Positions 1,594-25,898 of a stretch of 64,000 nt of DNA are shown piece after piece (positions within the stretch are counted from its first letter, which is position 1; each line of letters begins with the position of its first letter). The stretch spans positions 186,001 to 250,000 of IMG/VR virus record IMGVR_UViG_3300038463_000730. One strand, 5' to 3'. Below the pieces are notes generated by a model, which had not been told where the DNA came from, did not search any database, and was given only the letters and a program-made list of their open reading frames with translations. Both the position numbers and the translations under genes were made by a program.

Positions 1594-2463
1594 TTACTTG
1601 GCATTTTCACGCCGTATGCGAAGAATCACCTTCTCAGTTACTCCAAAATCTTTACCTACCTTACCGGCACCTCTTGGATCTGTCATGATTTGTTTAATCT
1701 GTTCATCGGTGAATACATGTTTGTTCGACGGTGCCTGTCCGATCGTGCGATGTGGAGGTAATGTTTCGAGCGTTCCGTTGCGCTTTAGACGCTGTCCATG
1801 CTTCATGCAATATAGTTCACCTTGGTATCTTAGATAATCCCGACCTCCACCAACCACATCACAATCAGGCGCATGGCACTTTCGCTTGCCTTCTGCAATT
1901 TCTTTCTCATGACGTTGTTTGGTTGTCTCTGCGATTGACTGAATACGTTTTCCCACAGTTTCTTCTGATTGAATACGACCGGTAAATACTTCTGAGAACT
2001 TTTGGCGCATTTCATCGGTATAAACTGTTGGATTTTTAATCTTTCCTTGACTTATATTATTGCAAGCTTCTTCGGAACGTATTCTGCCTTGACTCGGATG
2101 ACCGAGTTCTTCTATTTGGCGCAATGTTGCTTCACGTAATTTTTGTTTTGTAGACTCAGAATGAGCCGAAGAGCGACCCCCAGCTTTTAGGTTATAACCA
2201 AACTCATGGTTGCGTGTATCGTACTGTGTTATTAGCACCGCTTCTGTTTCATCGGCATCCTCACGAGTTTGACAAGTAGCAATTATTTCAAAAGTAAAAC
2301 TATCAACCCCATATTTATTCATGGCACGATGAATATACTGTCCGGTTTTTTCTGGATGTTTAGCAAAATAACAATGTTGCCTCCAACGATATTGATCTTT
2401 GTTAGACTGTCCGATGTAAACTTTGCTATTTATTGTATTTGTGATTTTATATAGATAATGCAT
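1594..2463 (-). mobile_element. Free-standing GIY-YIG homing endonuclease with NUMOD3-like repeats, a zinc module and C-terminal HTH
   Basis: HYLYKITNTINSKVYIGQS, GYNL..GG and HSESTKQKL motifs; start placed at ATG 2463 behind GGAGG. Confidence 0.88.
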
Positions 2464-2526
2464 AGTTGCCTCCACTAAACTAGTGGACAGCGTATTCTAT
2501 ATATCGACCTAATCCGAATTGTATAA

Positions 2527-4694: not shown

Positions 4695-7600
4695 TTAGTA
4701 CTTACGACCAGCGAAGGCCTTTGTTAGACTCGAATATAGATCGTCTGGCTCTCCTGATGGGAGCTGAGCCGATATCGGGTCACCTGATCCGATCATTCCG
4801 ATCATTGGAACACGTGATGCTTCCTTCTTGATTGCACGTGAAGGAGCCATCGCAACAATACGCTTCAAACTATTGAATGACTCGTCGTTGTAGCTGAGGA
4901 TTTCCTCGACCTGGGCCGCGAGAACGGATGGTTCCGTTCCGCACATTCCACGGTCTGCCATCTGGTAGGCCATGTCATATGCGCGTGCAACCTTTACCTT
5001 GTAGTCCGAGATCTCTTTCTCAGCAGCAGCCTTAGCATGCTCCTTTACAAGACCCTTCGCGAACTCCGATCCACCGTCAACAGGCTTCCACATCTGCATG
5101 TAGTAAGCGACTGCCGCTGGATCCGCTCCATGAGCAACGAGGTTTGGAACTTCCTCGTGGGTAATGGCTCCGGCTTTCACCATCTTCAAGATTTCCTCTG
5201 CATCCTTGCGGACCTTCGGTGGCGCCTCGGCGACATCCATCATCTTCGAGTGGATCTCTTCGATCTTCTCGATCTTGCCAAGGTCTCCCTCTGGCTTGAC
5301 GTCGAGCTGAGTCGTGTCGTCCGTGTACTTGTGGAACTCGGCCAACATTGGATTCCATTTGATCGACTCAGTCGCAAGCTTCGCACGGTATGCCGTACGT
5401 CCCTCGCGTGTCGTCAAGTCAAACGTCGCTGTATTCTTGAGTTCGAATTTCGTATCTGCTGGAGCCTGTGGCAAACTACCAAGCTGGTCCTTTGTCACTG
5501 CCACAGTGTTACCATTGTTACTATCGCTGGCCGCTGCCATTGCATGCTCCTTGTGTTCGCCTTCTTCTAGATTGACCAACTCCTTTAGCTCAGCAAGAAT
5601 TTGCTGCTCGGCTGGGTTTCCTTCGTCGTCTCCCCGTGCTTCGAGAGACGCAACCGCCTCAAGTGACTCGGTTCCACGTGCATAACGGACAAATCCGTCA
5701 AGACATTCTGTTGCATCGGCAAGAACATGGTTCGCATCAGAGATCGTGTCAGTTGACAACGTATCGATGTAAGAACGATTCTCTTCCGTGACAGCCTTGT
5801 TATCGTACAAGTCCTTCACTAGGTGAAGCTCGTCGATCTGGTTCTGAACCAAATCAGCTGTCTTGCGCATGCTGGACAATAGCGTCTTGTGAATGTCGAA
5901 ACGCATTCTCGACAATGTCGCTGTCGCCGCTGGCATACCCTCGCCCGGCGCCATCGGCGCTTCGCCTTCCATCGTCGGAATCGTATTACTAAGTTCTTCT
6001 TTTACATCGGAAAGATTAGTAATGGCTTCATCAAGCTTCTCGACCATCTGCTCTGGTCCGGCTTTGCCATCTCCGCCCTTGTCCGCTGTCGCAAGATCGC
6101 CCATCGGTGCGCCGCCCATTTCGCCCGCTGGCGAAGGAGCCGGTCCTGCCGCACCCATCGGTGCCGCATCCATTCCGCCACCCGCTGGTGCAACTGGAGG
6201 CTCGGCCTTCTTGAACATAGCAATGGCGCTTTCGAAACCATCGGCCTTGACCTTCTTCAACATCGATGCTCCGAACTCTTTCGTTGCAATCGACTCGCCG
6301 AGGACATCTGCACGTCCACTTGACAACTCATTAACAGTTGCCGCGAAAACTAGTTTGTCATCCGCAAAAATCTGCCACTGGCTCGCTCCGAGATCGACTT
6401 CACCAGTTGATGGCTTAGCAGCCTTGATGAATTTCGCTCGTAACGTTGCACGCTGCAAAAGCTCCTTGCGCTTTAGCTCGTCCTTTGGATCCGCAGACGA
6501 TGGCGACGGGTGTAGACCGGTCGTGCTGCCAACTCCTGGGAACGGAGGCTGGCCTTCCATCTGCTTGTCACCCTTCATACGAGTTTTCTCGTTGAGAGGA
6601 TCAACATCATACTTCTCTTTGCCTGGTGTGGGCTCGTTTACGCCACCCGCACCCTGGAAGTATGCACGACGCTTCTCAAGGGTTTCCTTGACGCGGGCAA
6701 TCGCTTCCTTACGGCGCGTACTACGCTGATCTAGCTCGGCGCGCAGAAGCCTCTTCTTACGAGCCTCCTCGCTTTCACCGGCTGACTGCGGTCCCGGGTG
6801 CATACCCTCGACCGGACCAGTGTCCATCTGGCCTTCCATTTGTTTATCACCGTGAGTACGGAGCTTCTCGTTTAGAGGATCCTTCTCGTACTTTGGTGTT
6901 CCTGGACTTGGCTCGTTCACACCACCGGCACCCTGAAAATAGCTCTTTTTTTCCATTGTTGTTTCCCTTGACCCATCACCTAGATTTGACAATTTACGAA
7001 AGTCCTCTTCAATCTTTGCGAGTTTATGCTCGATATCACGTTTTAGTGATAGGAACTGGTTCTTTAATGCATCATTATTCTCAGAATTCGTAGATGCAAC
7101 GCGCAAAGCGTAAGGATTATTCAGCGCCGCTGGATCTTGATCCAACGGAACCTGGGTTGCATCGACTATCGATGAACCACTATTACTAAAGTTTGAGGAA
7201 TCCTGAACCTCGCCCTCGTCTCGACCATCAAACTCTCGGATGAGAGTGTCCAGACCTTCTTTAATATGACTTACAATCTGTTGTTTAATTTCGTTGACCT
7301 TTTCACTTGATGTGCCGGTCAATGACTTAAGTTCGCTCAACCCTGCATCGGCCTGACTGTTTAGAGTCCTGGCAGATGCTAGAATATGACGAATCTTAGC
7401 TTGTGGATCGGCACCGTTAACTACGATCGATAGCTCTAGTGGCTTTAGATCCAAGTTAATCTCGCCGTAACATGACTTGCTGGTCATATGCGAACAAAAG
7501 TCCGCTTCCGTACGCGCAACACGTCCACAATCACTACAGATTGCACGACCCACTGCCGTACCCATCGATACACATGTAGCGTACCCTGTAGAAACTTTTC

Positions 7601-8117
7601 TTGCTAATTCAGGGAACGAAACTTTATCAAGCGCACATAACGCAATAACGCGCTTGGCCTTGCGGTCGTAATATGTATCGATGATTACACCACGAATGTG
7701 ATCTACTGATCCAGACTTGTGATCGATACAGAGTGGGCATCCGACCCACTTCTTGTAAGCTTTAAGTAACTCTTCCTCTGGGAAGATGTCACCGTTCGAA
7801 TTCTTGTAAGGCATGACCGATGGATCATTAGATACCCATCGAAGCGATTCGCCATTCGTCGCCCAACCAGCTGTTACCGGAAGACCACTGGCTGTCTTCT
7901 TTGGTTTACCTTCCGGGTCAACCGTTGAAGCCTCGGCTGCATGCATCATGACAGCTGAGAAATAAAGAAAGTCATCTCCCTTTGGAGCGATTCGCTTCAA
8001 ACCAGTCGCTAACGACTTAATGCGACTCTCAAGCTCTGGATCTGCAAGCACCTTCTCGGGTGACTCAATATCTGATTCCAAAACCTGACCTATTTCAGCA
8101 AACTTGTAAAGGGTCAT
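4695..8117 (-). CDS. Prohead (capsid maturation) protease fused to a long scaffold-like/polyprotein region
   Basis: N-terminal NSNGDIFPEEEL..IDH..IRGVIID..VSMG..CSDCG..C.H..E.N....ELSIVVNGADPQAKI fits a herpes/HK97-fold phage head protease; followed by coiled coils and a duplicated ~70-aa repeat. Confidence 0.78.
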   Translation of the reverse strand: MTLYKFAEIGQVLESDIESPEKVLADPELESRIKSLATGLKRIAPKGDDFLYFSAVMMHAAEASTVDPEGKPKKTASGLPVTAGWATNGESLRWVSNDPSVMPYKNSNGDIFPEEELLKAYKKWVGCPLCIDHKSGSVDHIRGVIIDTYYDRKAKRVIALCALDKVSFPELARKVSTGYATCVSMGTAVGRAICSDCGRVARTEADFCSHMTSKSCYGEINLDLKPLELSIVVNGADPQAKIRHILASARTLNSQADAGLSELKSLTGTSSEKVNEIKQQIVSHIKEGLDTLIREFDGRDEGEVQDSSNFSNSGSSIVDATQVPLDQDPAALNNPYALRVASTNSENNDALKNQFLSLKRDIEHKLAKIEEDFRKLSNLGDGSRETTMEKKSYFQGAGGVNEPSPGTPKYEKDPLNEKLRTHGDKQMEGQMDTGPVEGMHPGPQSAGESEEARKKRLLRAELDQRSTRRKEAIARVKETLEKRRAYFQGAGGVNEPTPGKEKYDVDPLNEKTRMKGDKQMEGQPPFPGVGSTTGLHPSPSSADPKDELKRKELLQRATLRAKFIKAAKPSTGEVDLGASQWQIFADDKLVFAATVNELSSGRADVLGESIATKEFGASMLKKVKADGFESAIAMFKKAEPPVAPAGGGMDAAPMGAAGPAPSPAGEMGGAPMGDLATADKGGDGKAGPEQMVEKLDEAITNLSDVKEELSNTIPTMEGEAPMAPGEGMPAATATLSRMRFDIHKTLLSSMRKTADLVQNQIDELHLVKDLYDNKAVTEENRSYIDTLSTDTISDANHVLADATECLDGFVRYARGTESLEAVASLEARGDDEGNPAEQQILAELKELVNLEEGEHKEHAMAAASDSNNGNTVAVTKDQLGSLPQAPADTKFELKNTATFDLTTREGRTAYRAKLATESIKWNPMLAEFHKYTDDTTQLDVKPEGDLGKIEKIEEIHSKMMDVAEAPPKVRKDAEEILKMVKAGAITHEEVPNLVAHGADPAAVAYYMQMWKPVDGGSEFAKGLVKEHAKAAAEKEISDYKVKVARAYDMAYQMADRGMCGTEPSVLAAQVEEILSYNDESFNSLKRIVAMAPSRAIKKEASRVPMIGMIGSGDPISAQLPSGEPDDLYSSLTKAFAGRKY
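6447..6941 (-). repeat. Two copies of a ~70-aa repeat (YFQGAGGVNEP.PG..KY..DPLNEK.R..GDKQMEGQ...G.HP.P.SA...RK..L.RA) at ~6738-6941 and ~6447-6662
   Basis: Directly visible in the translation. Confidence 0.92.
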
Positions 8118-8428: not shown

Positions 8429-9049
8429 TCACTTCGTCTTACTAAGTTCCTGCTGCTGGGCATCGAAGAGTTTACTGTCGTATGGAACCTTCTCTTCAAT
8501 ATGGTTGTCACCGCCCGCTTCATCGACCCAGCTCTTAGCTAATATATCTGTCTCCAAATAAGATTGAATACGCTCGTCCACTATTTCTTTCAATTGGTCG
8601 ATCTCTTTGCTCATCGTGTCCAATGTCTTGACTGCGTTATCTTTGAAATCGTCCGCTTGCAAGTTGTTGAAATAGTCCTTGAATATACGAAACTGTTTCG
8701 ATACATCATCAATGCTCATGTTGAAAGACTTCATCAACTTTTCAACTTGTGTGTCGGACATGAATGTCATCATGATCTGCGCACAATGAAAAGCTGCTTC
8801 CTTCATGTTATCTAGGTTTTCCTCGGCACGATCGCGATAATCGCGGAACGTCCGGCGAAACTTCCAGATCTGTTCCGGAGTGATGTCCTGGTTCTCTTTG
8901 AATGGAATGAACATCTTCTGAAGATGGTCAGCGAATACATCAATAACCTTGATCAGTTTGCTGAACGCCGTAATAGCTTTCTCAGCTTGCATTTTTTCGA
9001 CATCCGAGATGTCGTAGTTCATTTGTGTTCGATATGATCTTTTTTGCAT
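8429..9049 (-). CDS. Helical-bundle hypothetical protein
   Basis: Start moved to ATG 9049 (MQKRSY), which removes the overlap with the upstream gene. Confidence 0.6.
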   Translation of the reverse strand: MQKRSYRTQMNYDISDVEKMQAEKAITAFSKLIKVIDVFADHLQKMFIPFKENQDITPEQIWKFRRTFRDYRDRAEENLDNMKEAAFHCAQIMMTFMSDTQVEKLMKSFNMSIDDVSKQFRIFKDYFNNLQADDFKDNAVKTLDTMSKEIDQLKEIVDERIQSYLETDILAKSWVDEAGGDNHIEEKVPYDSKLFDAQQQELSKTK

Positions 9050-9050
9050 G

Positions 9051-10262
9051 TTAGACAAAGCCGCCTCCAATTGGACCACTGGTTCCCCAACCAAATCCGT
9101 TCGTGTTAGTTCCACCATCGGATGTTCCGACTTGCGGAACCTCATTAGGCTCTATACCACCTGGTACCTTTTTTGGTATGATATCAGCTTTCGGGTCAGT
9201 ATCGGTTCCTTGTCCATTTTGGTTTCTAGTACTAGCCGAACTATTTACGAAATCCCAGTGACTACCGTATGACGCATCACCCATGCCGTACGGGTTGACT
9301 TCGTTAGCTTCGTACAGTCTGACGCCGAAAGATGGGTCGTTAAGCTCGTAGCTTGTATCGAACTTGTAGTCCGCCACAGCATCGGGCCACAGCATCTCCA
9401 TCGCCGAATTCGAATCTTGACCAGCTATCGCATGGATCATCTTCTCGTAAAGCGTACGTACTTTCTTTGGTAATCCGGAGCAAAAATCGAACTTGTCTGC
9501 TTCAGCAATCGCATCCTCCGGGCTCATACCTTTCGACACCCGGTACAACGCAACCACGAGCCCGGTACGATCCTTACCATGCAAACAATGTACAAAAGTC
9601 GGACCTGATTCTTCGAATAGCTCTTTGAAATTCATCTTCATCAAGCCACGCAACGACTGTTGCTTCTTAGCCATGATCGGAATTATCACGTGGACCATTC
9701 CGAGCTTCTTCACGAGTGGACCGATCTTCTTAGCCGTGTCCAAATCCAAACTAACAATCTTCTTGATACCTAGTTTCTTCAGGTATATAAGGTCCTCAGG
9801 AGTAGCGGGAGCACCTCCTCGATAAAGCTGGTCGGTAACCTTAGAAAACCTAGGAATCGCTGGGTCTTCCAACACATCCACCGAACTCTCATCCCCCTCA
9901 GGTATGCCTTCGAACTTAAATTTCTTCCCCAACAAAGCGAGTGTTGTGCGAAGCGCTTTCTCTTCACTTTTTCCTTTCAATGCTGGAAACACAGAGTCGA
10001 ACACAGACTTGAACAAGACCCGGAACAACGCAAACAATTCATCATTGCCTGACGCACGCAATTTACGCATGACCGCCGAGTACGATAGGTCACCGACGTC
10101 AGATAGGTTGATAGAGTCGGTCGCGATCTTCCGAATCTCAACTTCTTTTAGACGTTCGACTGCCTTAGAACGACTCGAAAAGGTTCCGAAGTTCTTTCCG
10201 GTGTATGATTGCACCTGGTATCTCCCGTTCGGAAGTTTCCGGATGATGGCAGTCTTGATCAT
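9051..10262 (-). CDS. Protein-tyrosine/dual-specificity phosphatase (Siw14/IphP-like) with N-terminal extra domains
   Basis: FSKVTDQLYRGGAP, LKKLGIKKIVSL and P-loop FVHCLHGKDRTG (HCX5R). Confidence 0.88.
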   Translation of the reverse strand: MIKTAIIRKLPNGRYQVQSYTGKNFGTFSSRSKAVERLKEVEIRKIATDSINLSDVGDLSYSAVMRKLRASGNDELFALFRVLFKSVFDSVFPALKGKSEEKALRTTLALLGKKFKFEGIPEGDESSVDVLEDPAIPRFSKVTDQLYRGGAPATPEDLIYLKKLGIKKIVSLDLDTAKKIGPLVKKLGMVHVIIPIMAKKQQSLRGLMKMNFKELFEESGPTFVHCLHGKDRTGLVVALYRVSKGMSPEDAIAEADKFDFCSGLPKKVRTLYEKMIHAIAGQDSNSAMEMLWPDAVADYKFDTSYELNDPSFGVRLYEANEVNPYGMGDASYGSHWDFVNSSASTRNQNGQGTDTDPKADIIPKKVPGGIEPNEVPQVGTSDGGTNTNGFGWGTSGPIGGGFV

Positions 10263-10627
10263 TACTTGATTTTTCCATGCGGCTGGAAGAATGGTGAATC
10301 ATCCGCACTGATAACGGCATCACGAATCGAACCATTACCATCCAATGCCACGATCGCGAAAATGTTGTAACCGTTTACATATATCCGGTTACCATGGACC
10401 AGTTTCTTGCTAATACGGTGGACCGAGTCCAACACCAGACAATCACCTTTGGCATCGACAAACTTCCCGATCAATACGGCATAGTTGTTCTTTCCGCTGT
10501 CTGAGTACGAGATCGATTCGAACGTATCTCCGATGTACACCTCAACCATTTGATCTTTCAGGATCTCAAAAACTGATTCAATATAAGTAGGCATGTTATT
10601 TCCTGAGCAAATTGAGTCTGAAAGCAC
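10262..10627 (-). CDS. Hypothetical protein (small beta-rich, Sm-like?)
   Basis: Tightly packed ORF; true start probably the second Met (MPTYIE). Confidence 0.55.
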   Translation of the reverse strand: MLSDSICSGNNMPTYIESVFEILKDQMVEVYIGDTFESISYSDSGKNNYAVLIGKFVDAKGDCLVLDSVHRISKKLVHGNRIYVNGYNIFAIVALDGNGSIRDAVISADDSPFFQPHGKIK

Positions 10628-12737
10628 GTGATAGCTTTTCTACCCGGTCATAATCAACTGGTTGATAAGATGAAGTCTTATTGGTCGAAAGATAGTAGCG
10701 AACTTTGTTTTTGGTGAGGTGTTCTAGTTCTTCTGCGACCTCACCACATACATCAAGAATCTGATTACGATCATGTTCGACGTTCGGCTCGAACACAACA
10801 CAGTAACGGGTTCCTTTGATTTTGATCTCGTTGCCCGTTGTGAAAATCTTGTTGAAATGACGTGAAACAGTCTTTGCAAACTCTAAATTGTTCGCTTCAT
10901 CGTAACCAAAGATCTCAATAGCGTTGACCGTTCCAGCAGTAGCCGATAGAGGTGCGACCTCCGGAGCCTGGACCGAGTCAAACATATGCTCGATTTTCTG
11001 GACAAAATCTTGAACGTTTTTCACGTCGAAATTGCCAAAGAATGCATTGGCAAGAGTCTGCGCTTCCTCTTCCAGCTTCTTTTTGTAGTCTACTTTTTCT
11101 GCCATTGGCTGAGCCGCCGCTTCACCAGTTGGGGCCTGGGTCGGTTGCGTCGATGGAACGTAGTCAGCAGCCTGACGTAATGCTCCGAGTGCTTGTTGGT
11201 ATGCCGTTCTGCTCATTTGATGTTCAATTACCTTTTCCAAATCGCCGTATGTTATGATCCCATCCTTGCTCACATCAAGAACAGGACCGTTCTCCTTATA
11301 GGATGCCCTTTCATACCCAAGAGTCCATCCTGGAGCCTTCCTAAACTTAGGATTCTGTTCTACAATAACTGCTTGTGGATCTTCTGCTTTCGGATCGTGA
11401 AATTCCCAATTCACAGGCCAGAACGGCACACCGTGTTCATCCTTCGTTCCGCGATACTTATTGAAGTACGATGCATAATTGAATGCATCGGGCCAAAAAT
11501 TGGCAAGATAGTACTGTGTCGGACTACGGAACGTACCATGAACATTACCAAGGTGTGATTTGACGTAGCTCTCGATGTACGGGATCTGCTGCGTGCCGGA
11601 AAGCTGACGAAATTCCTTCGGACTACCTTTCCAACCGTTGTCCTTCAATGTATCGGGCATCATCTGGATCAATCCGGATGCCAACGAACCTGCCGATGGA
11701 GTCAGGTTCGACTCGATCAACATGGTTGGGATCAAGATCTCGGGTCTGACTCCGATTCGTTGACACATATCAGCGAACGCCTTCCAAAATTCTGGGTTCA
11801 ACTCAGCTGTCTTGATTAATTCATCGTTCATCGCAGCCATTTTGTTCAACGGTTTGATGTAGGTCAATGTCAGATCGCCTCCAGGCTGCAAAATGAGATG
11901 TGCGGTCAGATCGGCTGGTTTGATTAGCAACGGTGAAGGCATTGTGAACCGAACCATCAGTTCGACTTTACCCAGCTTCGTCGTAGCCATTGAAAAAATC
12001 GGATGTTTGAACATCTCTTGCGTTGCATCGAGCAATATCTGTCTCGAATCGTCATCGGGACGTTCTTTAGACTTGAGCAATGGTCCAATTTCTTTGGTGA
12101 ACCGTGTGATCAATCCCGCTTTTGGCGTAACGTTTCCACGCAGAAATGGTACATCAGACATCCGCTTCTTACGGTTATCGATGATATCCTGCTTCGATGG
12201 ATACACGAATCCATCAGCTTCTTCCGAAGCAGGAGCGGACTCGGAAGTTTCCGTGTTCGTTACTTGGTTAGTAGAATCTTCGGGCGTGACCGGTCGCGCT
12301 TCTGGCGCAACGGCGGGTTCGTCCGAACCGGCTGGCTGCTCGGCTGCGGGAGCCGAGGGATTCGTTTGTACTTTTGATTCAATAGCATCGTTAGTCTTGT
12401 TTTCTACGTCAGAGATCTTGTTATCAAGTCTCCCAGTCAGCTCAACAAGTTGGCCGATCTGTTCTTTAACGTCCACTAATGCCAATTTATACGTAGAAAG
12501 ATCGTAATCATCGATCGCATTTTCTAAACGTTTGAATGAGCGATATAGTTTCTGTAATGATGACTTTAGTTCATAGTTACTTGTTTGAAAATTGCGCGCT
12601 TCTTGACTGAAGAACGAATTCAGTAATCGACGAACGAGCCGCTTCAATCCCGAAACCGGACCAGCAACCTTAGTTAGGTCACCTGTCTGCTCGGCAGCGT
12701 ATAGCTCATAAGTCAACCGTCTGAATTGTGGATCCAT
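10596..12737 (-). CDS. Large probable virion protein containing an SLT/lytic transglycosylase domain
   Basis: MCQRIGVRPEILIPTMLIES (catalytic E)...ASGLIQMMPDT...LDVSKDGIIT. Confidence 0.78.
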   Translation of the reverse strand: MDPQFRRLTYELYAAEQTGDLTKVAGPVSGLKRLVRRLLNSFFSQEARNFQTSNYELKSSLQKLYRSFKRLENAIDDYDLSTYKLALVDVKEQIGQLVELTGRLDNKISDVENKTNDAIESKVQTNPSAPAAEQPAGSDEPAVAPEARPVTPEDSTNQVTNTETSESAPASEEADGFVYPSKQDIIDNRKKRMSDVPFLRGNVTPKAGLITRFTKEIGPLLKSKERPDDDSRQILLDATQEMFKHPIFSMATTKLGKVELMVRFTMPSPLLIKPADLTAHLILQPGGDLTLTYIKPLNKMAAMNDELIKTAELNPEFWKAFADMCQRIGVRPEILIPTMLIESNLTPSAGSLASGLIQMMPDTLKDNGWKGSPKEFRQLSGTQQIPYIESYVKSHLGNVHGTFRSPTQYYLANFWPDAFNYASYFNKYRGTKDEHGVPFWPVNWEFHDPKAEDPQAVIVEQNPKFRKAPGWTLGYERASYKENGPVLDVSKDGIITYGDLEKVIEHQMSRTAYQQALGALRQAADYVPSTQPTQAPTGEAAAQPMAEKVDYKKKLEEEAQTLANAFFGNFDVKNVQDFVQKIEHMFDSVQAPEVAPLSATAGTVNAIEIFGYDEANNLEFAKTVSRHFNKIFTTGNEIKIKGTRYCVVFEPNVEHDRNQILDVCGEVAEELEHLTKNKVRYYLSTNKTSSYQPVDYDRVEKLSRAFRLNLLRK

Positions 12738-12755: not shown

Positions 12756-14174
12756 TTATAGAAGCGCTTCGGCAACAGCCATTAGCTTGATACTTGCAAT
12801 CGGATCCTGATCCTGTAACTCCTGAGAGTATTCAAGGATTGCATGCCCAATGGCCTGCATGTCATCATCATCCATACTGGCTATCTTCGTAATGAAGTCC
12901 TCATGAGAAGCCGTACGCTGTCCCGGTGGCTTCGTTGGAAGAGCCTGTCCACTCAGTGGACTCACTGGTCCACCCGGTGGTGACTTCTTCTCTTCTTTTC
13001 CGCCTGGAGCAACTGGTCGTGGACCCGCTTTGATCTTAGATTTGTCCGCTGGCTTGTCTGCTGGCGGAACTTCCTTCTCTAGATCAATCATTGCTGGCAA
13101 TGAAGGTCGCATCACCATCTGGTGTACATTGGTTGGCATTTTTGGTCTTGCTTCGCTTGGGTCCGGAACAGACGTGATATCGTAATAACCGCCCTGTGGT
13201 TCTGTACCGGTACCGGTACCGGTACCGGCTGGTTCATCTGTCTTCACAATAGCCTGTTCAGCAGCGGGCTCGGCTCCGGGCGCCGCGGCAGGTTCCTCTG
13301 GGAGTTTCTCTTCTTGTGCTGGACTGATTTTATCCAGGTTCTCTTTCAACCACACAGTATACGGCCCAACTTCTTTTATGAAGAACTTGTTGTATGCCTG
13401 TTGTGCTGTGCTGATATCCTGCTTTAGAATATTAAGAATAGCTTGATAACCATTCGTGTCACTCGTTGAACGTGCTTCAGACAAGCTATTAAAATGGTCA
13501 ACTACTGTTGTCAACACTTCGTTTGCGTGCTCGATCTGAAACTCAAGATCTCGTTTAAACGATACAACGTCAGGATAGTTATTCTCAAGGTACTTCACCG
13601 CACGACGACGATAGTAGAACTGGTCCTTGAACCAATCGAACACAGACGCCTGCTTTTCAAAACCAAAAGTTTTCGAACCAGCGCCCTTGATACTCTCGTA
13701 GTAATCAAGAATGTCTTTACCAAGGTCTTTCGACATCGGACCAACCATGGTTCGGTTCTTGCCAGTAATCAATGTCTTATCTACCGTGTCAAGTTCTGTT
13801 AGAACGGTCTTCAATGTAGAATAGAATCGAGATAGCTGCCCGGCTGCCGCAACATAATCTTTACCAGCAGCTAACTTAGCAGCTAGATTGATCATCGTAC
13901 GAACGGATGTGCCTTTGTACTTACCGGTCTTACCCAATAAAATCGATCGGGCTAGATCATCCTGTTTACGAAGCAACAGCAAATACTTAGCAAAGTCAAC
14001 ATCGTGCTCTGCCAAAGTATCGGGCGTTACATCATAAGAAGGATCAATCTTTTTTCTACGTTCTGCCTTCTCTGCGTCGGATAGCTGCTTCTGTAGCTTT
14101 TTATTTGAAGGCTCGAAAAATTCTCTAGCCTTGTCTCTTATGCGTTTACGTTGTGCTAATTTATCGATTGACAT
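12756..14174 (-). CDS. Putative internal-head protein, helical N-half and Pro-rich linker
   Basis: Start moved to ATG 14174 behind GGAG (MSIDKLAQ); FEKQA and ITKIA motifs; (GTACCG)x4 at ~13204-13227 encodes GTGTGTGT. Confidence 0.6.
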   Translation of the reverse strand: MSIDKLAQRKRIRDKAREFFEPSNKKLQKQLSDAEKAERRKKIDPSYDVTPDTLAEHDVDFAKYLLLLRKQDDLARSILLGKTGKYKGTSVRTMINLAAKLAAGKDYVAAAGQLSRFYSTLKTVLTELDTVDKTLITGKNRTMVGPMSKDLGKDILDYYESIKGAGSKTFGFEKQASVFDWFKDQFYYRRRAVKYLENNYPDVVSFKRDLEFQIEHANEVLTTVVDHFNSLSEARSTSDTNGYQAILNILKQDISTAQQAYNKFFIKEVGPYTVWLKENLDKISPAQEEKLPEEPAAAPGAEPAAEQAIVKTDEPAGTGTGTGTEPQGGYYDITSVPDPSEARPKMPTNVHQMVMRPSLPAMIDLEKEVPPADKPADKSKIKAGPRPVAPGGKEEKKSPPGGPVSPLSGQALPTKPPGQRTASHEDFITKIASMDDDDMQAIGHAILEYSQELQDQDPIASIKLMAVAEALL

Positions 14175-14254
14175 GGTGACTCCATCATTACCTTTCCTAT
14201 CTATGACAAAATAATCAAAGGTTATGGCTCTTTTCCTCGGCATTGTATTCCTGT

Positions 14255-16105
14255 TTATTTCGGCGGAGGTGGAGGTGGAGCTGCGCCTGCGCCAGCTTCT
14301 CCACCCGGAGGGCCACCTGGAGGCGCCCCGGGAGGACCGGGCGGTCCGCCACCCGGAGGAGCACCAAGATCCGGCATACCGCCGCCACCACCGGCACCTG
14401 GCAAGTCACCACCGCCTCCACCACCGTCGTCATCACCACCTGGCGTTTCACCAGGCAACGGAGCTTCGGCGGTCTCTGGGATCTCATCCTCATCGCCAAG
14501 AGTGCGAAGCTCGTTGAGCGGCATCTTTTGCAAGCTCACTTGCTCCTTTTTGCGAATCGCGTCCTGCACATCTTCCTTGCGCATCTTACGAACCTCTTCC
14601 TCGAACTCTAGTCCGAGCGAACGATAGAGTGTCTGGTTTGATACGCGCTTGTTCTTTACGTCATCTGTCAAATGAACAAGGTTCTGAATATAGTCACCGG
14701 CATCGAAGAGCGACATGTGATTCCAGTCAATCTCCGGAATGATCAAATGCTTCTGCTTCTCGTGGAACACATAGAATTCGTTCAACTTCGAGATCGGTGC
14801 GAAAATCTTGCGACGCAACCACGTTGAGAGCATGTTACGGAACTGCATGTAACGTTGACGAAGTACGTCCAACGCTACACCGCCGTTGGCATAGGTCGTA
14901 TCCTGACCACCATCCATCAATACAGATGGTACCATCAATCCGATCCAGATTTCTTTAATCAGTTGCGTGATGTCACCAGAGATATCATAGATACCCTGAC
15001 CCGAACCGATACGCTCAACCGTTACGGCATCGTTTGTGAAGATCTTGAAGTCTTTGTCGTACTGTGCTGCTTCGAAAATCTCACGATACGAATCGATTTG
15101 CTGCGGACTTGGTTTGAACTCAGGTGATCCGACCTTCACCAACGTGAGTGGGTTGATCATATTGTCTGCCTGAGCGAACTTTGACTCACGGAGCTTGTCA
15201 AAGAGCATCAACTGACGAAAAAACGCGACCGGTAGTCCGGTTCCACGTGACTCGTACGGCGAGATACGTCGTGCAAGATGGCTTACATAAAAATTGTCAA
15301 GCGGAATGTTCTGGCCACGCTTGACGTACTCAATAATGTGCGGCCCGAGCTGTTTCTTTTGTTCAAGATCAGATGGTTTCTGCGAAAACACGATACGACG
15401 GAGGTTGGCATCAGGCCTGAGCATGATAATCGGTTCACTTGATATAACCGAAGGACTGACAACAACATAATCCGGGTTCTGAATACGGAGACGACTCCAA
15501 CGAAGATTGCGCTCATCCAATTCAGCATAGATAAATGACTCCCCTAGCAGCCAGAACTCCTGAGCAATCTGAACGCAGACGTTCATCAAGTCGATTTCAT
15601 CAATCATCTCATTGAAGAACTTTTCAACACGTTTATCAGGACAACGAATCGTCATCTTACTGATCGGATACGTGCTATGTAGATTGATTGCGTTGTTCAC
15701 GAACGGGTTCAACGCATAGAAGCTGCGACACCACGCATTGATCGTCGCTCGATCACGAGGAAGGTTTAGGTTCGAGTTTAGCCAAAGAGGAGAATAGACC
15801 TCCGGCGCCTGACGTACCGTGTCTCCCATACCACCTTGCCATTGAGCCGAGGTGTTTGTTCCTAGTGTACTGGAAAGGTTGGCGTACTTCGACATCGGCT
15901 GTTTACCAACCGAATACGTTGCGTAACCACCGGCACTAGGCTCTTCATCTCGTGCAACGGGACCGGAGCCATCTCGATAGATGCCTTTGTTTACCTCTTC
16001 TTCAAGAGCAGCACGTCGATATTGAGAAACATTGCGTGCCACATGACTCGATATGATCGGTGGCAGATTTCTATTAGGTATTCTTGGGTTTCTAGGGTTA
16101 ACCAT
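14255..16105 (-). CDS. Portal protein
   Basis: NPFVNNAINLHSTYP, EFWLLGESF, HLARRISPYESRGT, GL.VPSVLMDG..TYAN; near terminase and protease; Gly/Pro tail. Confidence 0.8.
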   Translation of the reverse strand: MVNPRNPRIPNRNLPPIISSHVARNVSQYRRAALEEEVNKGIYRDGSGPVARDEEPSAGGYATYSVGKQPMSKYANLSSTLGTNTSAQWQGGMGDTVRQAPEVYSPLWLNSNLNLPRDRATINAWCRSFYALNPFVNNAINLHSTYPISKMTIRCPDKRVEKFFNEMIDEIDLMNVCVQIAQEFWLLGESFIYAELDERNLRWSRLRIQNPDYVVVSPSVISSEPIIMLRPDANLRRIVFSQKPSDLEQKKQLGPHIIEYVKRGQNIPLDNFYVSHLARRISPYESRGTGLPVAFFRQLMLFDKLRESKFAQADNMINPLTLVKVGSPEFKPSPQQIDSYREIFEAAQYDKDFKIFTNDAVTVERIGSGQGIYDISGDITQLIKEIWIGLMVPSVLMDGGQDTTYANGGVALDVLRQRYMQFRNMLSTWLRRKIFAPISKLNEFYVFHEKQKHLIIPEIDWNHMSLFDAGDYIQNLVHLTDDVKNKRVSNQTLYRSLGLEFEEEVRKMRKEDVQDAIRKKEQVSLQKMPLNELRTLGDEDEIPETAEAPLPGETPGGDDDGGGGGGDLPGAGGGGGMPDLGAPPGGGPPGPPGAPPGGPPGGEAGAGAAPPPPPPK

Positions 16106-19676: not shown

Positions 19677-20396
19677 TTATGTATCTTTGGCCGGAGTCAA
19701 GATAGCAAAAGCATCTTCTTTTTGGCTTTGATCTTGATCCGATTGGTCAAGTCGTCCAAGCGTATCGTACCCTGCATAGTCAGAGTCACCCGTGTGAGAA
19801 TTGACTTTTTCAGCTGTAATTAGGCTGTTAATGTAGGTACGGAGATTTCGGTCTTCCCATTCATCCGATGGTATATTCTCTTGCTGGAACAATCGACGAA
19901 TGTGATCAAGCACGGCGTGAACATGGACGTTGCCATGGCGATCTTCAATGAAGTTTTTGATCGTGCTATCGATAATCGGATGCTCTTGACAGAGCTTTGG
20001 CATCTTTTTATTCGACTCTTCATCATCACCGAGTTCGACCTCGATAGATGGTTCAGTTGTGAGTTGAGCTTCGTCGCTCGGCACAATACCGGAGCCAGAC
20101 ATCATCGGTGGTTCGGTTGCGAACTGAGCTGTTTTGGCTAGATCCCGGCGCTCGGCCTCGGTCATCTTCAAATACGTGGCTAACCCGGTGCGCGAACGCA
20201 TATCCGATACAGCTTCCTCCACCGAGGTATAGCGAGACTTGTTTCCAATGATTTCGTTGATTCGATCGATCGGTACAGCTTCGTACTGACGTCTCGATTG
20301 AACGTTCTCTTTGTGCAAATTCTTAGCGAATGTCCGCTCTAGTTCATTAGCGAACATATCACTCTGCGTGACGATTTTGTTGCCACCACGACTCAT
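19677..20396 (-). CDS. Hypothetical head-region protein
   Basis: ORF with AGGA RBS; LAKTAQ motif. Confidence 0.6.
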   Translation of the reverse strand: MSRGGNKIVTQSDMFANELERTFAKNLHKENVQSRRQYEAVPIDRINEIIGNKSRYTSVEEAVSDMRSRTGLATYLKMTEAERRDLAKTAQFATEPPMMSGSGIVPSDEAQLTTEPSIEVELGDDEESNKKMPKLCQEHPIIDSTIKNFIEDRHGNVHVHAVLDHIRRLFQQENIPSDEWEDRNLRTYINSLITAEKVNSHTGDSDYAGYDTLGRLDQSDQDQSQKEDAFAILTPAKDT

Positions 20397-20404
20397 ATCG
20401 TTCC

Positions 20405-21367
20405 TTATTGGCCTGGGTAGTTTGCTGCCCAGTCCATGTTATCAGACGATGTACTGTCGAAATCTTCGTCAATCATGTAACCACGGTCACGACGAAGTGG
20501 GTAACCCATATCTGCCAACAGCTGCATCGTCTCGGCCTGATCACGTTCGGTCAATGAATACTTCTTAACAAGTCTGCCGAAAAGGTCTTCGATATCATGT
20601 CCGCCCGATACAGAACCGTTAATGCAGATACGAGCGATACGGCTGATGTACATCGGAACCGTAACAATGATTCCACCGACGTGCGTGGCCTTCTGGCCCT
20701 CTTTCACGAGTGCTGACTGGCCCGAGGCTCTTTTCTTCGTACGCTTCTTACCCTCAAGGGTTTCGAGGCGCTCCGTGAGGCCACCGATGCCGTTGTTAAT
20801 GTGCTTCATTGCCTCTTCAACCATATTTGCATCAATCGCACCGTTGTAGTCATTGCGCATGGCTTCACGGGTCTTGGATTTTAGGTTGTCGAGATACGAA
20901 AGCGCACGGTCACATCCAGCGATATCGTTCCCACTGTGCTTCGGAACGTTATTGAATCGATCAGAAATCCACGCCATGAAATTATCGGCCTTGGAATAAT
21001 CCCACGGGTCATGCTTTTCCTCTTGTTTGTGTTCATCAATCTCCACTTCAGCATCCGAAACGGTCAAGTCATCTTGAGCGTCGTTCGGTGCTCCAGGGAT
21101 CCGTGGGAGCACGAGCTGAATCTCTTCCATTGGCATGACTTGCATGCCATGTGGTTCTCCGCTGTGAGCGTGCCCCTCTGGCTCTTCGTGAACTTCGAGA
21201 ACCTGCTCCTCTGTCGGAGGTTCTTCCCCTTCGTAAACGACAAGGTCATCGTCAAGATGAACATGCGCCGGGTCTTCCTCCTTGTCCTTGGCCATATTAG
21301 AGCCCTGAGGAAGGATTTGTGCAGTAACGATAAGAGGCTGGTTGTTGTTTGTAGGTGCGAGGGCCAT
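20405..21367 (-). CDS. Hypothetical head-region protein (acidic N-half, helical C-half)
   Basis: AAGGA RBS; TKKRAS motif. Confidence 0.6.
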   Translation of the reverse strand: MALAPTNNNQPLIVTAQILPQGSNMAKDKEEDPAHVHLDDDLVVYEGEEPPTEEQVLEVHEEPEGHAHSGEPHGMQVMPMEEIQLVLPRIPGAPNDAQDDLTVSDAEVEIDEHKQEEKHDPWDYSKADNFMAWISDRFNNVPKHSGNDIAGCDRALSYLDNLKSKTREAMRNDYNGAIDANMVEEAMKHINNGIGGLTERLETLEGKKRTKKRASGQSALVKEGQKATHVGGIIVTVPMYISRIARICINGSVSGGHDIEDLFGRLVKKYSLTERDQAETMQLLADMGYPLRRDRGYMIDEDFDSTSSDNMDWAANYPGQ

Positions 21368-21418
21368 GGTTTTCCTTGAGAATCTAATCTATCTAGTATA
21401 ACTGGATATTAGTTGAGT

Positions 21419-21712
21419 TTAGCCCTTCTTGGGCTTAAACTTGTCTGGACGAGTATCGGTAATCTTCTTCTCGTTCTCTTTTTGACGCTTCTTGTTCTTC
21501 TTGCGCCATTCCGGTATTGATTCAGTCTTCCCATCCGTCATATCCTTGTAAACTGACGTTCCGGGTCCGGATGGACAATCCACGTAGTCATAGTTCTGGA
21601 ACAGCTGAGCTAACTTCGTACGATTACCAGTTGCATACTCTTTACACAAGAGTTCGAAAATATAACAGCGTTTTACAATCTCTTTCATGCTCGTACTCCT
21701 AATCCGGGCCAT
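21419..21712 (-). CDS. Small basic hypothetical protein
   Basis: ORF between neighbours; start probably MKEIVK behind AGGAG. Confidence 0.5.
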   Translation of the reverse strand: MARIRSTSMKEIVKRCYIFELLCKEYATGNRTKLAQLFQNYDYVDCPSGPGTSVYKDMTDGKTESIPEWRKKNKKRQKENEKKITDTRPDKFKPKKG

Positions 21713-22530
21713 TCAGGTCTGGCCAATCCCGGATCCCCATCATCCGAATCCCCAGTTTCGACAATTTCTTGTCCTTCGTTTACTTTGCCTCGATACCCTT
21801 CGAGTCTTTCAATTCTAGGTATCCAGTTCCATACGTCCGTAGCGTTTAATAGTGCAACGGTACGTTTCGGATTGTATTCCATTGCCTTATCAAGCTTTTC
21901 AACCATGTAACTGTCGCTTGCGCCAACAATCAGCTTTGAGTGCTGCTTGATCCAACTGATGATCTTCGGGTCTAGATCAAAATCTAGCTTTGCCGCGATG
22001 TAAATGGCTCGTACGATGCGTTTTGCGTCTCGTCCTAGGGTTAGCTCGGGCTCAAGACAGGTTCGAACCATTCTTTCCTTAATGTCCTTCATTCCAAGCT
22101 TGGTCGGGTCAAGTATTGTTTTCAAATCGAGGCTTAAGAGCAACGCATTGCATGTGAAATCACGACTAAACATCTCCCGCTGTAACTCAGTAGGATTATG
22201 AATGCCTTTCTTTGCCAAAATAGCATTGATACTCGGGTCAACATTGTTTGATGAGAAATCTATCTTCAAATTCGATAGATCAACCGAAACGTGACCGTCA
22301 TCAGCTACTTTTTTCTTGATATTGAACTTCTGACCCATCGCATGGGCGAATTCTTCAGCTAAAAACCGAACCGACTTATCACCTGTCGTGATATCGAGAT
22401 CTTGGTACTTGCCTTTTGATTCACCGATTACTTTATCGCGCGGAATACCGCCACAGATGTACGGCATCGATATGTTCTTGTACGATCGATGTATCTGATA
22501 CAAAGTTTGCAGTATTTCGGTTAGTTTCAT
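21685..22530 (-). CDS. Class II tRNA nucleotidyltransferase (CCA-adding)/poly(A) polymerase family
   Basis: YICGGIPRD, DLDITT (DxD), SRDFTCNAL, DAKRIVRA. Confidence 0.88.
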   Translation of the reverse strand: MKLTEILQTLYQIHRSYKNISMPYICGGIPRDKVIGESKGKYQDLDITTGDKSVRFLAEEFAHAMGQKFNIKKKVADDGHVSVDLSNLKIDFSSNNVDPSINAILAKKGIHNPTELQREMFSRDFTCNALLLSLDLKTILDPTKLGMKDIKERMVRTCLEPELTLGRDAKRIVRAIYIAAKLDFDLDPKIISWIKQHSKLIVGASDSYMVEKLDKAMEYNPKRTVALLNATDVWNWIPRIERLEGYRGKVNEGQEIVETGDSDDGDPGLARPEWPGLGVRA

Positions 22531-22541
22531 CGGTTTTCAAC

Positions 22542-24437: not shown

Positions 24438-24460
24438 CTGAGTAAATACTGAATTATTGG

Positions 24461-25201: not shown

Positions 25202-25898
25202 AGTCAGTTTCCCATATACTTATCAAGTTATATCCAGCCTTCTTTATCAATTCCTCGCGCTGAAGCGTCTGTTGATACAATTCGCCGAATGTTTTCTTAC
25301 TCCTTTGATTGAAATCGTTTTTATTAAATCGAATTGGGTTGCCATGCCAATAATCACCGTAAAACTCATACACGGTATTTGTTTCTGGCTTGTACCCATC
25401 CACTTTGTAATTATGATAGAGGACTTTTACTAGCGTCTGCCGATGTGCAACATCTACACCGAGTCCGTCTAACCATTCCGTCTCTTGCTTAGAAATACGC
25501 TTTAAACAACGAGGGCAACCATTACCTGCAAGGTGGTTGCCTGGAGTCTGACTAAACGCAACATTACAGCGTTTACATAAAATCGAGATCTTGGTGTCTT
25601 TGTTTTTGTAGACTACACCTGCGTAATCGTATAGCTGTCCATGCACCTGGATAGCATCTACCACAAATTCGCTAATGCGTTTGCGTTTTGATTCGGCTTT
25701 GGCAACGTTACCACATGTCGGACAGCCCTGACCTCGCATATGATTATTTGCTAACTGTGTGAACATGTGTTCACACACATTACATCGAACGGTTATCTTC
25801 GAACTTAGGTTTACGTAACCACATTCCGAATAGTCATATGTGCAACAGTGAACCAACCTGCATCTATCTAAAAACTCTGATTTGGTCAGTTTCCTCAT
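25182..25898 (-). mobile_element. Putative homing endonuclease: DUF723-like zinc repeats plus a Vsr/PD-(D/E)XK-like nuclease
   Basis: Two YDY...I.C..C...F.Q...NH..G.GCP.C repeats; VDGY..VYEFYGDYWHGNP..GYNLISIWE. Confidence 0.8.

What the first reader, a model, noticed from the sequence alone, without database searches (positions are those of the whole stretch)
9051..12737. Enzymes bracketed by tag motifs: a probable packaged phosphatase and transglycosylase
Seen: the phosphatase ORF reads MIKTA|small domain|IRKIA|helical domain-HCX5R domain-DSNSA|acidic tail. The SLT domain of the 713-aa ORF begins right after LIKTA. Inference: both are released as free enzymes in the head. An injected phosphatase could counter kinase-based signalling or defence; the SLT could open the peptidoglycan.
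Basis: partly seen in the sequence, partly recalled or inferred. Interest (0 to 1): 0.62.

Follow-up and report, generated by a model that had tools for sequence, protein, structure and literature searches.

The report
Phosphatase and wall-cutter in megaphage head module
A 435-kb peat phage related to Bacillus phage G carries a cysteine phosphatase and a peptidoglycan-cutting enzyme in its head-assembly gene block, joined to extra modules by short Lys-x-Ala joints that probably serve as maturation-protease cut sites, although neither cutting nor packaging has been shown.

Summary
ORF 9051-10262(-) has a basic small domain (aa 1-47), a helical domain, an atypical DSP/PTP fold (aa 138-280, HCLHGKDRTG) and a disordered acidic tail. 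MIKTA, IRKIA and DSNSA sit at the predicted domain borders. ORF 10596-12737(-) has LIKTA (aa 307-311) in a low-confidence linker just before a GH23/SLT domain.

Both genes belong to a head module (terminase, portal, X, SLT, ~130 aa, PTP, 206 aa, ~55 aa, protease-scaffold) found in 82 of 83 related viral loci. Most relatives encode the same pieces as separate genes whose starts coincide with the window's motif sites.

KTA is the tripeptide most enriched around the head module. K-x-A is concentrated in residues 2-40 of head-module proteins here and in most relatives examined. Phage G head proteins also carry it near their N-termini.

The best reading is that K-x-A is the prohead protease's site and that the fused proteins are cut at these joints. 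DSNSA is a different motif: it is conserved in the phosphatase family but not enriched genome-wide. Cleavage, packaging, ejection and the phosphatase substrate remain inference. Short-form relatives lack N-terminal leaders, so any head-targeting element is more likely C-terminal. This is a new member of a known kind, the protease-processed packaged enzymes such as T4 Alt and the SPN3US E proteins.

The parts
9051..10262 (-). 403-aa phosphatase ORF: small basic domain, helical domain, atypical DSP/PTP domain, acidic disordered tail
10248..10262 (-). MIKTA (aa 1-5). It is homologous to a K-x-A that in relatives follows a 20-27 aa leader, for example L046 FGLIKTAIIRKLPNG
10122..10262 (-). small b3-a domain (aa 1-47), pI 10.7, with a weak AP2-like resemblance
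10122..10136 (-). IRKIA (aa 43-47) at the end of the small-domain helix. The linker carries [KR]-x-A in most long homologues, and the L015 gene starts at this joint
9909..10115 (-). helical domain (aa 50-118)
9423..9851 (-). PTP-fold catalytic domain (aa 138-280)
9567..9590 (-). P-loop H225-C226-LHGKD-R232, invariant in 18 homologues
9402..9416 (-). DSNSA (aa 283-287), right after the last PTP helix. D283 and N285 are nearly invariant, and D-x-N-x-[AV] sits at a fixed offset in 47 of 72 distinct relatives
9054..9401 (-). acidic disordered tail (aa 288-403, pI 4.1) with a conserved PxVG...GP...GGF end. In some relatives it is fused to the next gene
10596..12737 (-). 713-aa ORF: coiled coil, disordered P/E-rich stretch, a/b domain, linker, SLT/GH23 domain, disordered stretch, ferredoxin-like C-terminal domain
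11805..11819 (-). LIKTA (aa 307-311) in a linker with pLDDT below 50. K309 and A311 are invariant in the three long orthologues (KTA, KIA, KTA)
11163..11804 (-). SLT/GH23 lytic transglycosylase domain (aa 312-525). E342-S343 is invariant, and the GLIQ and YY.ANF motifs are present
10599..10934 (-). conserved C-terminal a/b (ferredoxin-like) domain (aa 602-713), also present in the short-form relatives
10262..10627 (-). conserved 121-aa ORF between the two enzymes, function unknown
8429..9049 (-). 206-aa helical protein. Its true start is the ATG at 9049, one base after the phosphatase stop. It is fused to the phosphatase in P0001, P0005, P0019, L015 and L085
4695..8117 (-). 1140-aa prohead protease (N-terminal ~250 aa, 36% identical to phage G gp19) fused to a scaffold-like region. 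It is the presumed processing enzyme
12756..14243 (-). 495-aa head-module protein downstream of the portal gene, with a conserved N-terminal D-K-x-A-Q
14255..16105 (-). portal protein, 32% identical to phage G gp14

Best explanation
The two ORFs are conserved components of the head-morphogenesis module of a phage-G-like megaphage clade. One carries a GH23 lytic transglycosylase. The other carries an atypical dual-specificity (Cys-based PTP-fold) phosphatase.

In this phage each enzyme is fused to upstream modules:
- The SLT domain follows a coiled coil and an a/b domain.
- The phosphatase domain follows a basic small domain and a helical domain.
In most relatives these modules are separate genes or absent.

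The fusion joints carry Lys-x-Ala. This motif is concentrated near the N-termini of head-module proteins in this clade. I infer that it is the cleavage site of the prohead protease encoded four genes downstream, with Ala at P1, as in the assemblin-type proteases.

During head maturation the polypeptides would then be cut at these joints. The products would be the set of pieces that relatives encode separately: an SLT + C-domain protein of about 46 kDa and a helical + PTP enzyme. After ejection the SLT would cut peptidoglycan and the phosphatase would act on a host phospho-substrate.

Shown: domains, catalytic motifs, synteny, the coincidence of joints with gene starts, and motif enrichment. 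Inferred: cleavage, packaging, ejection and substrate.
For: - Catalytic domains.
- Head-module synteny holds in 5 of 5 inspected loci and in 82 of 83 viral loci.
- SLT genes of 22 distinct short-form relatives start 2-11 residues before window L313.
- 5 of 7 distinct long SLT forms have K-x-A 2-7 residues upstream of the domain.
- PTP-only genes (69 distinct) and N-domain genes (43 distinct) are separate in relatives. L015 starts at the IRKIA joint with FVRTAK.
- K-x-A precedes the small domain in at least 17 of 28 distinct N-domains.
- KTA is the top region-enriched tripeptide.
- N-terminal K-x-A is enriched in the window (15 observed, 5.5 expected), L005, L006 and L008. Across 1101 unique proteins it occurs in 497 against 264 +/- 14 in shuffles.
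- Phage G head proteins gp13, gp19 and gp20 carry KTA near their N-termini.
- Phage G gp22, a muramidase in the same module, was found in particle proteomics (PMC12484599).
- Both motif linkers have low or reduced pLDDT.
Against: - There is no proteomic or biochemical evidence, and the protease's specificity is unknown. No solved relative was found by sequence.
- Total K-x-A is not above composition.
- L009 shows no N-terminal enrichment.
- Short-form relatives have no N-terminal leader, so the joints are not needed for packaging in those phages.
- The conserved K-x-A before the small domain could be structural.
- DSNSA is not a K-x-A site, and D-x-N-x-A is not enriched genome-wide.
- The helical/PTP joint, the commonest gene boundary in relatives, has no K-x-A in the window.
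- The sequences in the clade-wide tests are related, so those p-values are inflated.
Confidence: 0.5

Rival explanations
1. Both proteins are head or virion components, but K-x-A is not a cleavage site. It would instead be a structural or binding element, such as a strand cap of the small domain or a scaffold- or portal-docking peptide. The fused proteins would then stay intact in the particle.
For: - The K-x-A before I-R-K-L-P-N-G sits at a fixed position next to the first strand.
- The invariant K-I-A-P-K in the protease itself is followed by Pro and lies in a conserved block.
- Total K-x-A is not enriched over composition.
Against: - At the SLT joint only K309 and A311 are invariant among the 3 aligned long orthologues, in a linker with pLDDT below 50, and K-x-A recurs there in 5 of 7 distinct long forms.
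- The motif recurs near the N-termini of many unrelated head proteins.
- The joints coincide with gene starts in relatives.
Confidence: 0.25
2. The enzymes are late-expressed cytoplasmic or periplasmic factors that are not packaged. The SLT would help lysis or local wall remodelling for assembly or exit. The phosphatase would modify host or phage proteins during assembly. Their place in the head module would reflect co-regulation only.
For: - No direct virion evidence exists.
- Phage G's module also holds holin and endolysin genes next to head genes.
- A metatranscriptome contig covers the gene junction, which is compatible with plain expression.
Against: - The position between portal and protease-scaffold is strictly conserved in 82 of 83 loci, despite only 30-40% identity of these two proteins.
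- The genome has a second, stand-alone DSP phosphatase and a second weak SLT-like ORF elsewhere that could serve cytoplasmic or lysis roles.
- No signal peptide or transmembrane segment was noticed in the translated sequences (not tested with a predictor), so an SLT acting from inside lacks an obvious export route.
Confidence: 0.15
3. The motif coincidences are chance matches in K- and A-rich proteins.
For: - K-x-A is short and the head proteins are rich in Lys and Ala.
- The region used for the first test was chosen after seeing the hits.
Against: - KTA ranks first of 1695 tripeptides.
- The enrichment is positional while control motifs are flat.
- The result is replicated in L005, L006 and L008.
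- K and A are conserved in aligned positions.
Confidence: 0.05

Closest known systems
T4 Alt and internal proteins (IPI-III): packaged enzymes and proteins processed by the prohead protease gp21 (own knowledge)
   Same: Enzyme cargo is loaded into the prohead, trimmed by the head maturation protease at a short motif, and injected with the DNA.
   Different: T4 uses a [L/I]-x-E site and an N-terminal capsid-targeting sequence. Here the inferred site is K-x-A, the cargo is a phosphatase rather than an ADP-ribosyltransferase, and most relatives have no N-terminal leader. None of it is shown experimentally.
SPN3US / phiKZ ejection (E) proteins cut by gp245 / gp175 (PMC7411985, PMC10052503, abstracts)
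   Same: A giant phage packages many head proteins together with the genome, these proteins are cleaved by an essential prohead protease, and they enter the host cell.
   Different: There is no sequence relation. The motif there is [S/A/G]-x-E (own knowledge). The present clade is phage-G-like, with a protease fused to the scaffold.
T7 gp16 internal core protein with an N-terminal lytic transglycosylase domain (own knowledge)
   Same: A GH23-type enzyme is carried inside the head and ejected to open the peptidoglycan.
   Different: No homology beyond the SLT fold was seen. The PHROG hits are unknown families and a baseplate hub. The architecture and the phage type are different.
Phage G gp22 muramidase/amidase in the head module, detected in particles (PMC12484599)
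   Same: A cell-wall hydrolase is encoded between the protease and the major capsid gene of the nearest cultured relative and is found in virions.
   Different: The enzyme family and the position in the module differ. Phage G has no detectable homologue of the phosphatase.
Atypical DSP / PFA-DSP / TpbA / DUSP23 phosphatases (PDB 4r0s, 7mom, 2img, 6byf)
   Same: PTP fold with an HCxxGKxRTG-type P-loop. Cys, Arg and His are invariant.
   Different: There is no conserved general-acid Asp at the TpbA-equivalent loop in the long forms. The enzyme sits in a phage head module with extra N-terminal domains and a conserved disordered tail. The substrate is unknown.
Polyvalent proteins of phages and conjugative elements (PMC5512222) and Pfam PTP-SAK
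   Same: Effector enzyme domains, including SLT and DSP-PTPase types, are strung together and delivered with the DNA. PTP-SAK scores 32.2 bits against a cut-off of 27.
   Different: Here each polypeptide has one enzyme domain, the genes sit inside the head module, and the pieces are usually separate genes.

Membership tests
Cys-based PTP superfamily, atypical DSP (Pfam Y_phosphatase3 / Y_phosphatase2 / PTP-SAK) | HCX5R(S/T) P-loop | tested here: met
   H225-C226-LHGKD-R232-T233. All these residues are invariant in 18 homologues.
Cys-based PTP superfamily, atypical DSP (Pfam Y_phosphatase3 / Y_phosphatase2 / PTP-SAK) | Profile score above the curated threshold | tested here: met
   PF13350 scores 37.6 (cut-off 22.2), PF03162 35.0 (27) and PF22784 32.2 (27).
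Cys-based PTP superfamily, atypical DSP (Pfam Y_phosphatase3 / Y_phosphatase2 / PTP-SAK) | PTP fold | tested here: met
   AF2 pLDDT is 84-95 over aa 141-280. Foldseek matches TpbA, DUSP23 and PFA-DSP1 at E about 1e-7 with TM (target) about 0.7.
Cys-based PTP superfamily, atypical DSP (Pfam Y_phosphatase3 / Y_phosphatase2 / PTP-SAK) | General-acid Asp in the loop upstream of the P-loop | tested here: inconclusive
   The aligned loop reads IPIMAKK in the window and PID in many short forms, and no Asp is invariant there. D173 and D231 are invariant elsewhere.
Cys-based PTP superfamily, atypical DSP (Pfam Y_phosphatase3 / Y_phosphatase2 / PTP-SAK) | Phosphatase activity and substrate | not testable with these tools
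   This needs pNPP, phosphopeptide, PP-InsP or polyP, and nucleic-acid end assays.
GH23 / SLT lytic transglycosylase | Catalytic Glu in the E-S motif, plus the GLxQ and Y..N motifs | tested here: met
   E342 and S343 are invariant in 10 homologues. GLIQ is at aa 355-358 and YYLANF at aa 409-414.
GH23 / SLT lytic transglycosylase | Pfam SLT (PF01464) above the gathering score | tested here: not met
   The score is 16.2 bits against a cut-off of 21.3, and there was no hit at E 0.01. Membership rests on the PDB profile match and on the fold.
GH23 / SLT lytic transglycosylase | Similarity to a solved lytic transglycosylase | tested here: met
   The profile matches 9udh (phage lytic transglycosidase) at E 2.2e-11. 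Foldseek ranks 9udh first (TM by target 0.67; E 5.5e-3, no match reached E 0.001), followed by MltE, phiKZ gp144, MltC and MltF.
Prohead-protease-processed packaged (internal/ejection) head proteins | Encoded within the head-morphogenesis module together with a prohead protease | tested here: met
   The genes lie between the portal and the protease-scaffold in the window and in 82 of 83 related loci.
Prohead-protease-processed packaged (internal/ejection) head proteins | Carries the protease's recognition motif at the module borders | tested here: inconclusive
   K-x-A lies at the borders and is enriched near N-termini. The protease's specificity is only inferred.
Prohead-protease-processed packaged (internal/ejection) head proteins | Present in mature virions in cleaved form | not testable with these tools
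   The phage is uncultured and known only from peat metagenomes. No proteome exists.
Polyvalent proteins (Iyer et al. 2017) | Two or more effector/enzymatic domains in one polypeptide | tested here: not met
   Only one enzymatic domain per ORF was detected. The other domains have no family match.

The most novel reading that the evidence does not exclude
The phage-G-like megaphages use a maturation-protease code of their own, Lys-x-Ala with cleavage after Ala, closer to herpesvirus assemblin than to the x-x-Glu code of T4 and phiKZ. They use it to process a conserved head cargo that includes a PTP-fold phosphatase. This would be the first phosphatase known to be injected by a phage. It would reset host phospho-signalling, or disarm kinase- or phosphorylation-dependent immunity, at the moment of DNA entry. 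Its basic AP2-like N-domain would ride on the DNA.
Probability: 0.25. Interest if true: 0.72.

Novelty: new member of a known kind. Interest (0 to 1): 0.52.

Why it matters
If the phosphatase is a packaged, protease-released enzyme, it adds a new enzymatic class to the proteins that phages inject ahead of gene expression. It would then be a candidate counter-defence or takeover factor conserved across at least 111 huge-phage contigs.

The K-x-A motif, if it is the protease site, would allow head-cargo proteins to be predicted from sequence in an uncultured clade of 200-490 kb phages. It can be tested in the one cultured relative, phage G.

The gene-fission pattern also gives clean construct boundaries for expressing the SLT and phosphatase domains.

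Tried and rejected
- blastn of the region and tblastn of the phosphatase against the phage collection found nothing. The first related-loci scans, run with single proteins, found only a fragment of the same phage.
- Pfam on the small domain, helical domain, tail, SLT N-region and SLT C-region gave no credible family.
- The idea that the small domain is an AP2/Arm-type DNA-binding domain has only weak support. The top PDB profile hit is the AP2 factor WRI1 at E 0.077, the topology is b3-a, and the pI is 10.7. It is kept as a lead, not a finding.
- The profile of the protease domain found no solved relative, so P1 specificity could not be argued from structure.
- Complex prediction of the phosphatase tail (aa 283-403) with the 206-aa neighbour gave no verdict (score 0.00). 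This is neither support for nor evidence against binding.
- D-x-N-x-A as a general second tag was rejected genome-wide, with 27 observed against 27.8 expected. It recurs, however, in head proteins of relatives and is conserved in the phosphatase family.
- A programmed frameshift joining the phosphatase to the next ORF was considered. The junction is TAA-C-ATG with a GGAGG upstream, so two coupled genes is the simpler reading.
- The laid contigs showed no variants and say nothing about packaging.
- The large profile search (search of protein representatives) was not used, because the word search and the viral scan already gave ample relatives.
Full report
**Setting.**
- The window is bases 186001-250000 of a single 434,688-bp virus record, with nearly all long ORFs on the minus strand.
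- The portal (14255-16105) is 32% identical to Bacillus phage G gp14.
- The major capsid protein, just outside the window, is 52% identical to phage G gp27. The protease domain of the 1140-aa ORF is 36% identical to phage G gp19.
- A Pol III-type polymerase lies at 38742-42272. This fits the phage-G group described in PMC7824862.
- The same DNA occurs at 100% identity in peat metagenomes from at least two further studies.

**The observation: phosphatase ORF (9051-10262, minus strand, 403 aa).**
- Pfam Y_phosphatase3, Y_phosphatase2 and PTP-SAK match above their gathering scores over aa 138-255.
- The P-loop is H225-C226-LHGKD-R232-T-G. It is invariant in 18 homologues.
- The AF2 model shows:
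  - a three-stranded sheet plus helix at aa 6-47;
  - a helical domain at aa 61-111;
  - a disordered linker at aa 124-131;
  - a confident PTP fold at aa 146-280;
  - disorder from aa 283 to the end.
- Foldseek places the catalytic domain with TpbA, DUSP23/VHZ, plant and fungal PFA-DSP/Siw14 and DUF442 proteins.
- MIKTA is aa 1-5, just before the first strand. IRKIA is aa 43-47, at the end of the small-domain helix. DSNSA is aa 283-287, directly after the last PTP helix.
- The tail is acidic (pI 4.1) and the small domain very basic (pI 10.7).

**The observation: SLT ORF (10596-12737, minus strand, 713 aa).**
- The AF2 model shows:
  - a coiled coil at aa 3-123;
  - a disordered Pro/Glu-rich stretch;
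  - a moderate-confidence a/b domain at aa 200-298;
  - a linker with pLDDT below 50 at aa 299-311 that contains LIKTA (aa 307-311);
  - a confident domain at aa 312-525;
  - a second disordered stretch;
  - a ferredoxin-like C-terminal domain at aa 602-713.
- The central domain is a GH23 lytic transglycosylase.
  - The profile matches phage lytic transglycosidase 9udh at E 2e-11.
  - Foldseek's top hits are 9udh, MltE, phiKZ gp144, MltC and MltF.
  - E342-S343 is invariant.
- Pfam SLT itself stays below threshold.

**Context.**
- Word-based protein search found 217 relatives of the phosphatase.
- Every context inspected shows the same module: terminase, portal, X, SLT, ~110-140 aa, phosphatase, ~206 aa, ~55 aa, protease-scaffold of ~1100-1250 aa..., a conserved 229-aa protein.
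- A profile scan of viral contigs returned 111 relatives. In 82 of the 83 loci analysed (79 from this scan plus L005, L006, L008 and L009) the phosphatase lies in this module.
- Many of the contigs are 200-480 kb long.
- Terminase and portal are 60-70% identical to the window's. The two enzymes are only 30-40% identical. They are fast-evolving but positionally fixed.

**Gene fission matches the motif sites.**
- Most relatives encode the pieces separately.
- Twenty-two distinct SLT genes of ~325-385 aa start 2-11 residues before the equivalent of window L313, for example MAN|LGSNFY. That is exactly where the window has ...LIKTA-E|LNPEFW.
- Forty-three distinct genes encode the small + helical domains. 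Sixty-nine encode PTP + tail alone, starting at window-equivalent residue ~135.
- The small domain stands alone in L009 and L068.
- The L015 gene begins at the IRKIA-equivalent linker with MSTPSFVRTAK|RIDLS.
- Fully fused phosphatases like the window's occur only in L005 and L006.

**Is K-x-A meaningful?**
- In the three long SLT orthologues only K309 and A311 are conserved in the linker: KTA, KIA, KTA.
- Of seven distinct long forms with a clear domain start, five have K-x-A 2-7 residues upstream.
- At least 17 of 28 distinct N-domain proteins have K-x-A two residues before I-R-K-L-P-N-G, after a 20-27 aa leader. L046 reads FGLIKTAIIRKLPNG. The window's MIKTA is therefore a leaderless remnant of that site.
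- The linker after the small domain carries [KR]-x-A-[STAG] or K-S-x-A-D in most members.
- Genome-wide, KTA is the tripeptide most enriched in the 165-232 kb region: rank 1 of 1695, Fisher 2.3e-7.
- KTA is 4.9-fold denser in the synteny-defined head module, p 3.9e-5.
- K-x-A occurs in residues 2-40 of 15 of 23 head-module proteins against 102 of 576 others, p 1.3e-6. Six control motifs are flat.
- Within-protein shuffles give the following:

| Locus | With K-x-A in residues 2-40 | Expected from shuffles | P |
|---|---|---|---|
| Window | 15 | 5.5 | <0.0005 |
| L005 | 11 | 4.9 | 0.002 |
| L006 | 13 | 4.5 | <0.0005 |
| L008 | 9 | 4.6 | 0.02 |
| L009 | 6 | 5.0 | not significant |

- Over 1101 unique proteins of the related loci, 497 have K-x-A in residues 2-40 against 264 +/- 14 in shuffles. 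Density peaks in residues 21-40. These sequences are related, so the significance is overstated.
- Phage G head proteins show the same habit: gp13 MKRLISKTAA, gp20 MSKKISRLKKTAL and gp19 LGLVKTAAKVVKIAPK.
- Total K-x-A is not above composition. The signal lies in position and in the KTA form.

**DSNSA.**
- D283 and N285 are nearly invariant in the family.
- D-x-N-x-[AV] lies at a fixed offset after the P-loop in 47 of 72 distinct relatives. It marks the fold/tail border.
- It is not a K-x-A site and is not enriched genome-wide.
- It does recur in the 221-aa protein next to the protease and in the scaffold regions of relatives.
- It may be a second site or a functional motif. I rate cleavage there lower than at the K-x-A joints.

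**Mechanism proposed.**
- The 1140-aa ORF has an N-terminal protease domain with invariant Asp-His, Ser-Met-Gly and further conserved blocks. These are shared with phage G gp19.
- By analogy with T4 and with phiKZ/SPN3US (abstracts), I infer that it cuts head proteins after the Ala of K-x-A.
- That would remove short N-terminal leaders and separate the fused modules of these two ORFs.
- Short-form relatives lack leaders. Head incorporation therefore more probably depends on the conserved C-terminal parts:
  - the ferredoxin-like domain of the SLT protein;
  - the conserved PxVG...GP...GGF tail of the phosphatase.
- In P0001, P0005, P0019, L015 and L085 that tail runs on into the next gene's product.
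- A complex prediction for the tail plus that neighbour gave no verdict.

**What stays open.**
- The phosphatase substrate cannot be read from the fold. Close structural relatives act on phosphotyrosine, inositol pyrophosphates, glucans or RNA 5' ends.
- The usual general-acid position is not conserved.
- The genome has a second stand-alone DSP phosphatase and a second weak SLT-like ORF elsewhere. This argues mildly that the head-module copies have a separate, virion-linked role.

**Novelty.**
- Packaged, protease-trimmed enzymes and head-borne lytic transglycosylases are known.
- Phage G's module holds a virion-detected muramidase.
- My literature searches found no description of a head-module or packaged PTP-fold phosphatase, nor of a K-x-A code for this clade. 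The library is incomplete, and the 2020 phage G structure paper was not held.
- I rate this a new member of a known kind. It offers a testable, moderately interesting extension.

Noticed in passing
window 8429-9145 (-) / 9049: The 238-aa ORF listed mechanically overlaps the phosphatase by 95 nt. Homologues start at the ATG at 9049, one base after the phosphatase TAA (TAA-C-ATG, with GGAGG 14 nt upstream). In several relatives the two genes are one ORF, a Rosetta-stone fusion.
   Followed up: yes
window 1594-2475 (-): A 293-aa ORF is homologous to GIY-YIG proteins at the same place in L005 and L008 but is absent from L006. It is probably a homing endonuclease inserted into the head module next to the conserved 229-aa gene.
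   Followed up: partly
window 4695-8117 (-), about aa 395-540: The protease-scaffold protein contains two copies of a ~60-aa repeat (K/R-x-YFQGAGGVNEP-x-PG...DPLNEK...GDKQMEGQ). It also holds long Ala/Pro/Gly/Met-rich low-complexity stretches.
   Followed up: no
genome 68.5 kb (L014:1396-1845, -) and 307.5 kb (L012:1348-2031, -): There is a second, stand-alone dual-specificity phosphatase of 149 aa (phrog_10650, E 1e-7). There is also a second weak SLT-like ORF (16 bits). Both lie outside the structural region.
   Followed up: partly
L010:14137-15153 (-) = genome 180137-181153: As called, the major capsid protein (338 aa) has about 45 residues more at its N-terminus than phage G gp27, and this extension contains two K-x-A. 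Either it is a propeptide or the true start is Met46.
   Followed up: partly
window 14255-16105 (-), last ~60 aa: The portal ends in an unusual Gly/Pro low-complexity tail (GGGGGGDLPGAGGGGG...PPGGPPG...PPPPPPK).
   Followed up: no
window 12756-14243 (-) aa 448-458, and phage G gp14 aa ~621-630: The hexapeptide KIASMD is shared between the C-terminal region of the 495-aa protein downstream of the portal and the C-terminus of the phage G portal. This may be a conserved K-x-A-S site or a displaced portal segment.
   Followed up: no
whole record G000: IMG/VR classes the 434,688-bp record as a provirus, yet CheckV rates it 100% complete. The first ~100 kb has genes on both strands, unlike the rest. 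No host flank was examined.
   Followed up: no
window 19677-30062 (-): Several ORFs upstream of the terminase (239, 246, 240, 544 and 169 aa) also carry KTA, three times in the 544-aa ORF. None has a family match. They may be further virion proteins.
   Followed up: no
window 10141-10368: A 230-nt contig from a peat metatranscriptome library, identical in sequence, covers the junction of the 121-aa gene and the phosphatase start. It hints at transcription in situ, but DNA carry-over is not excluded.
   Followed up: partly
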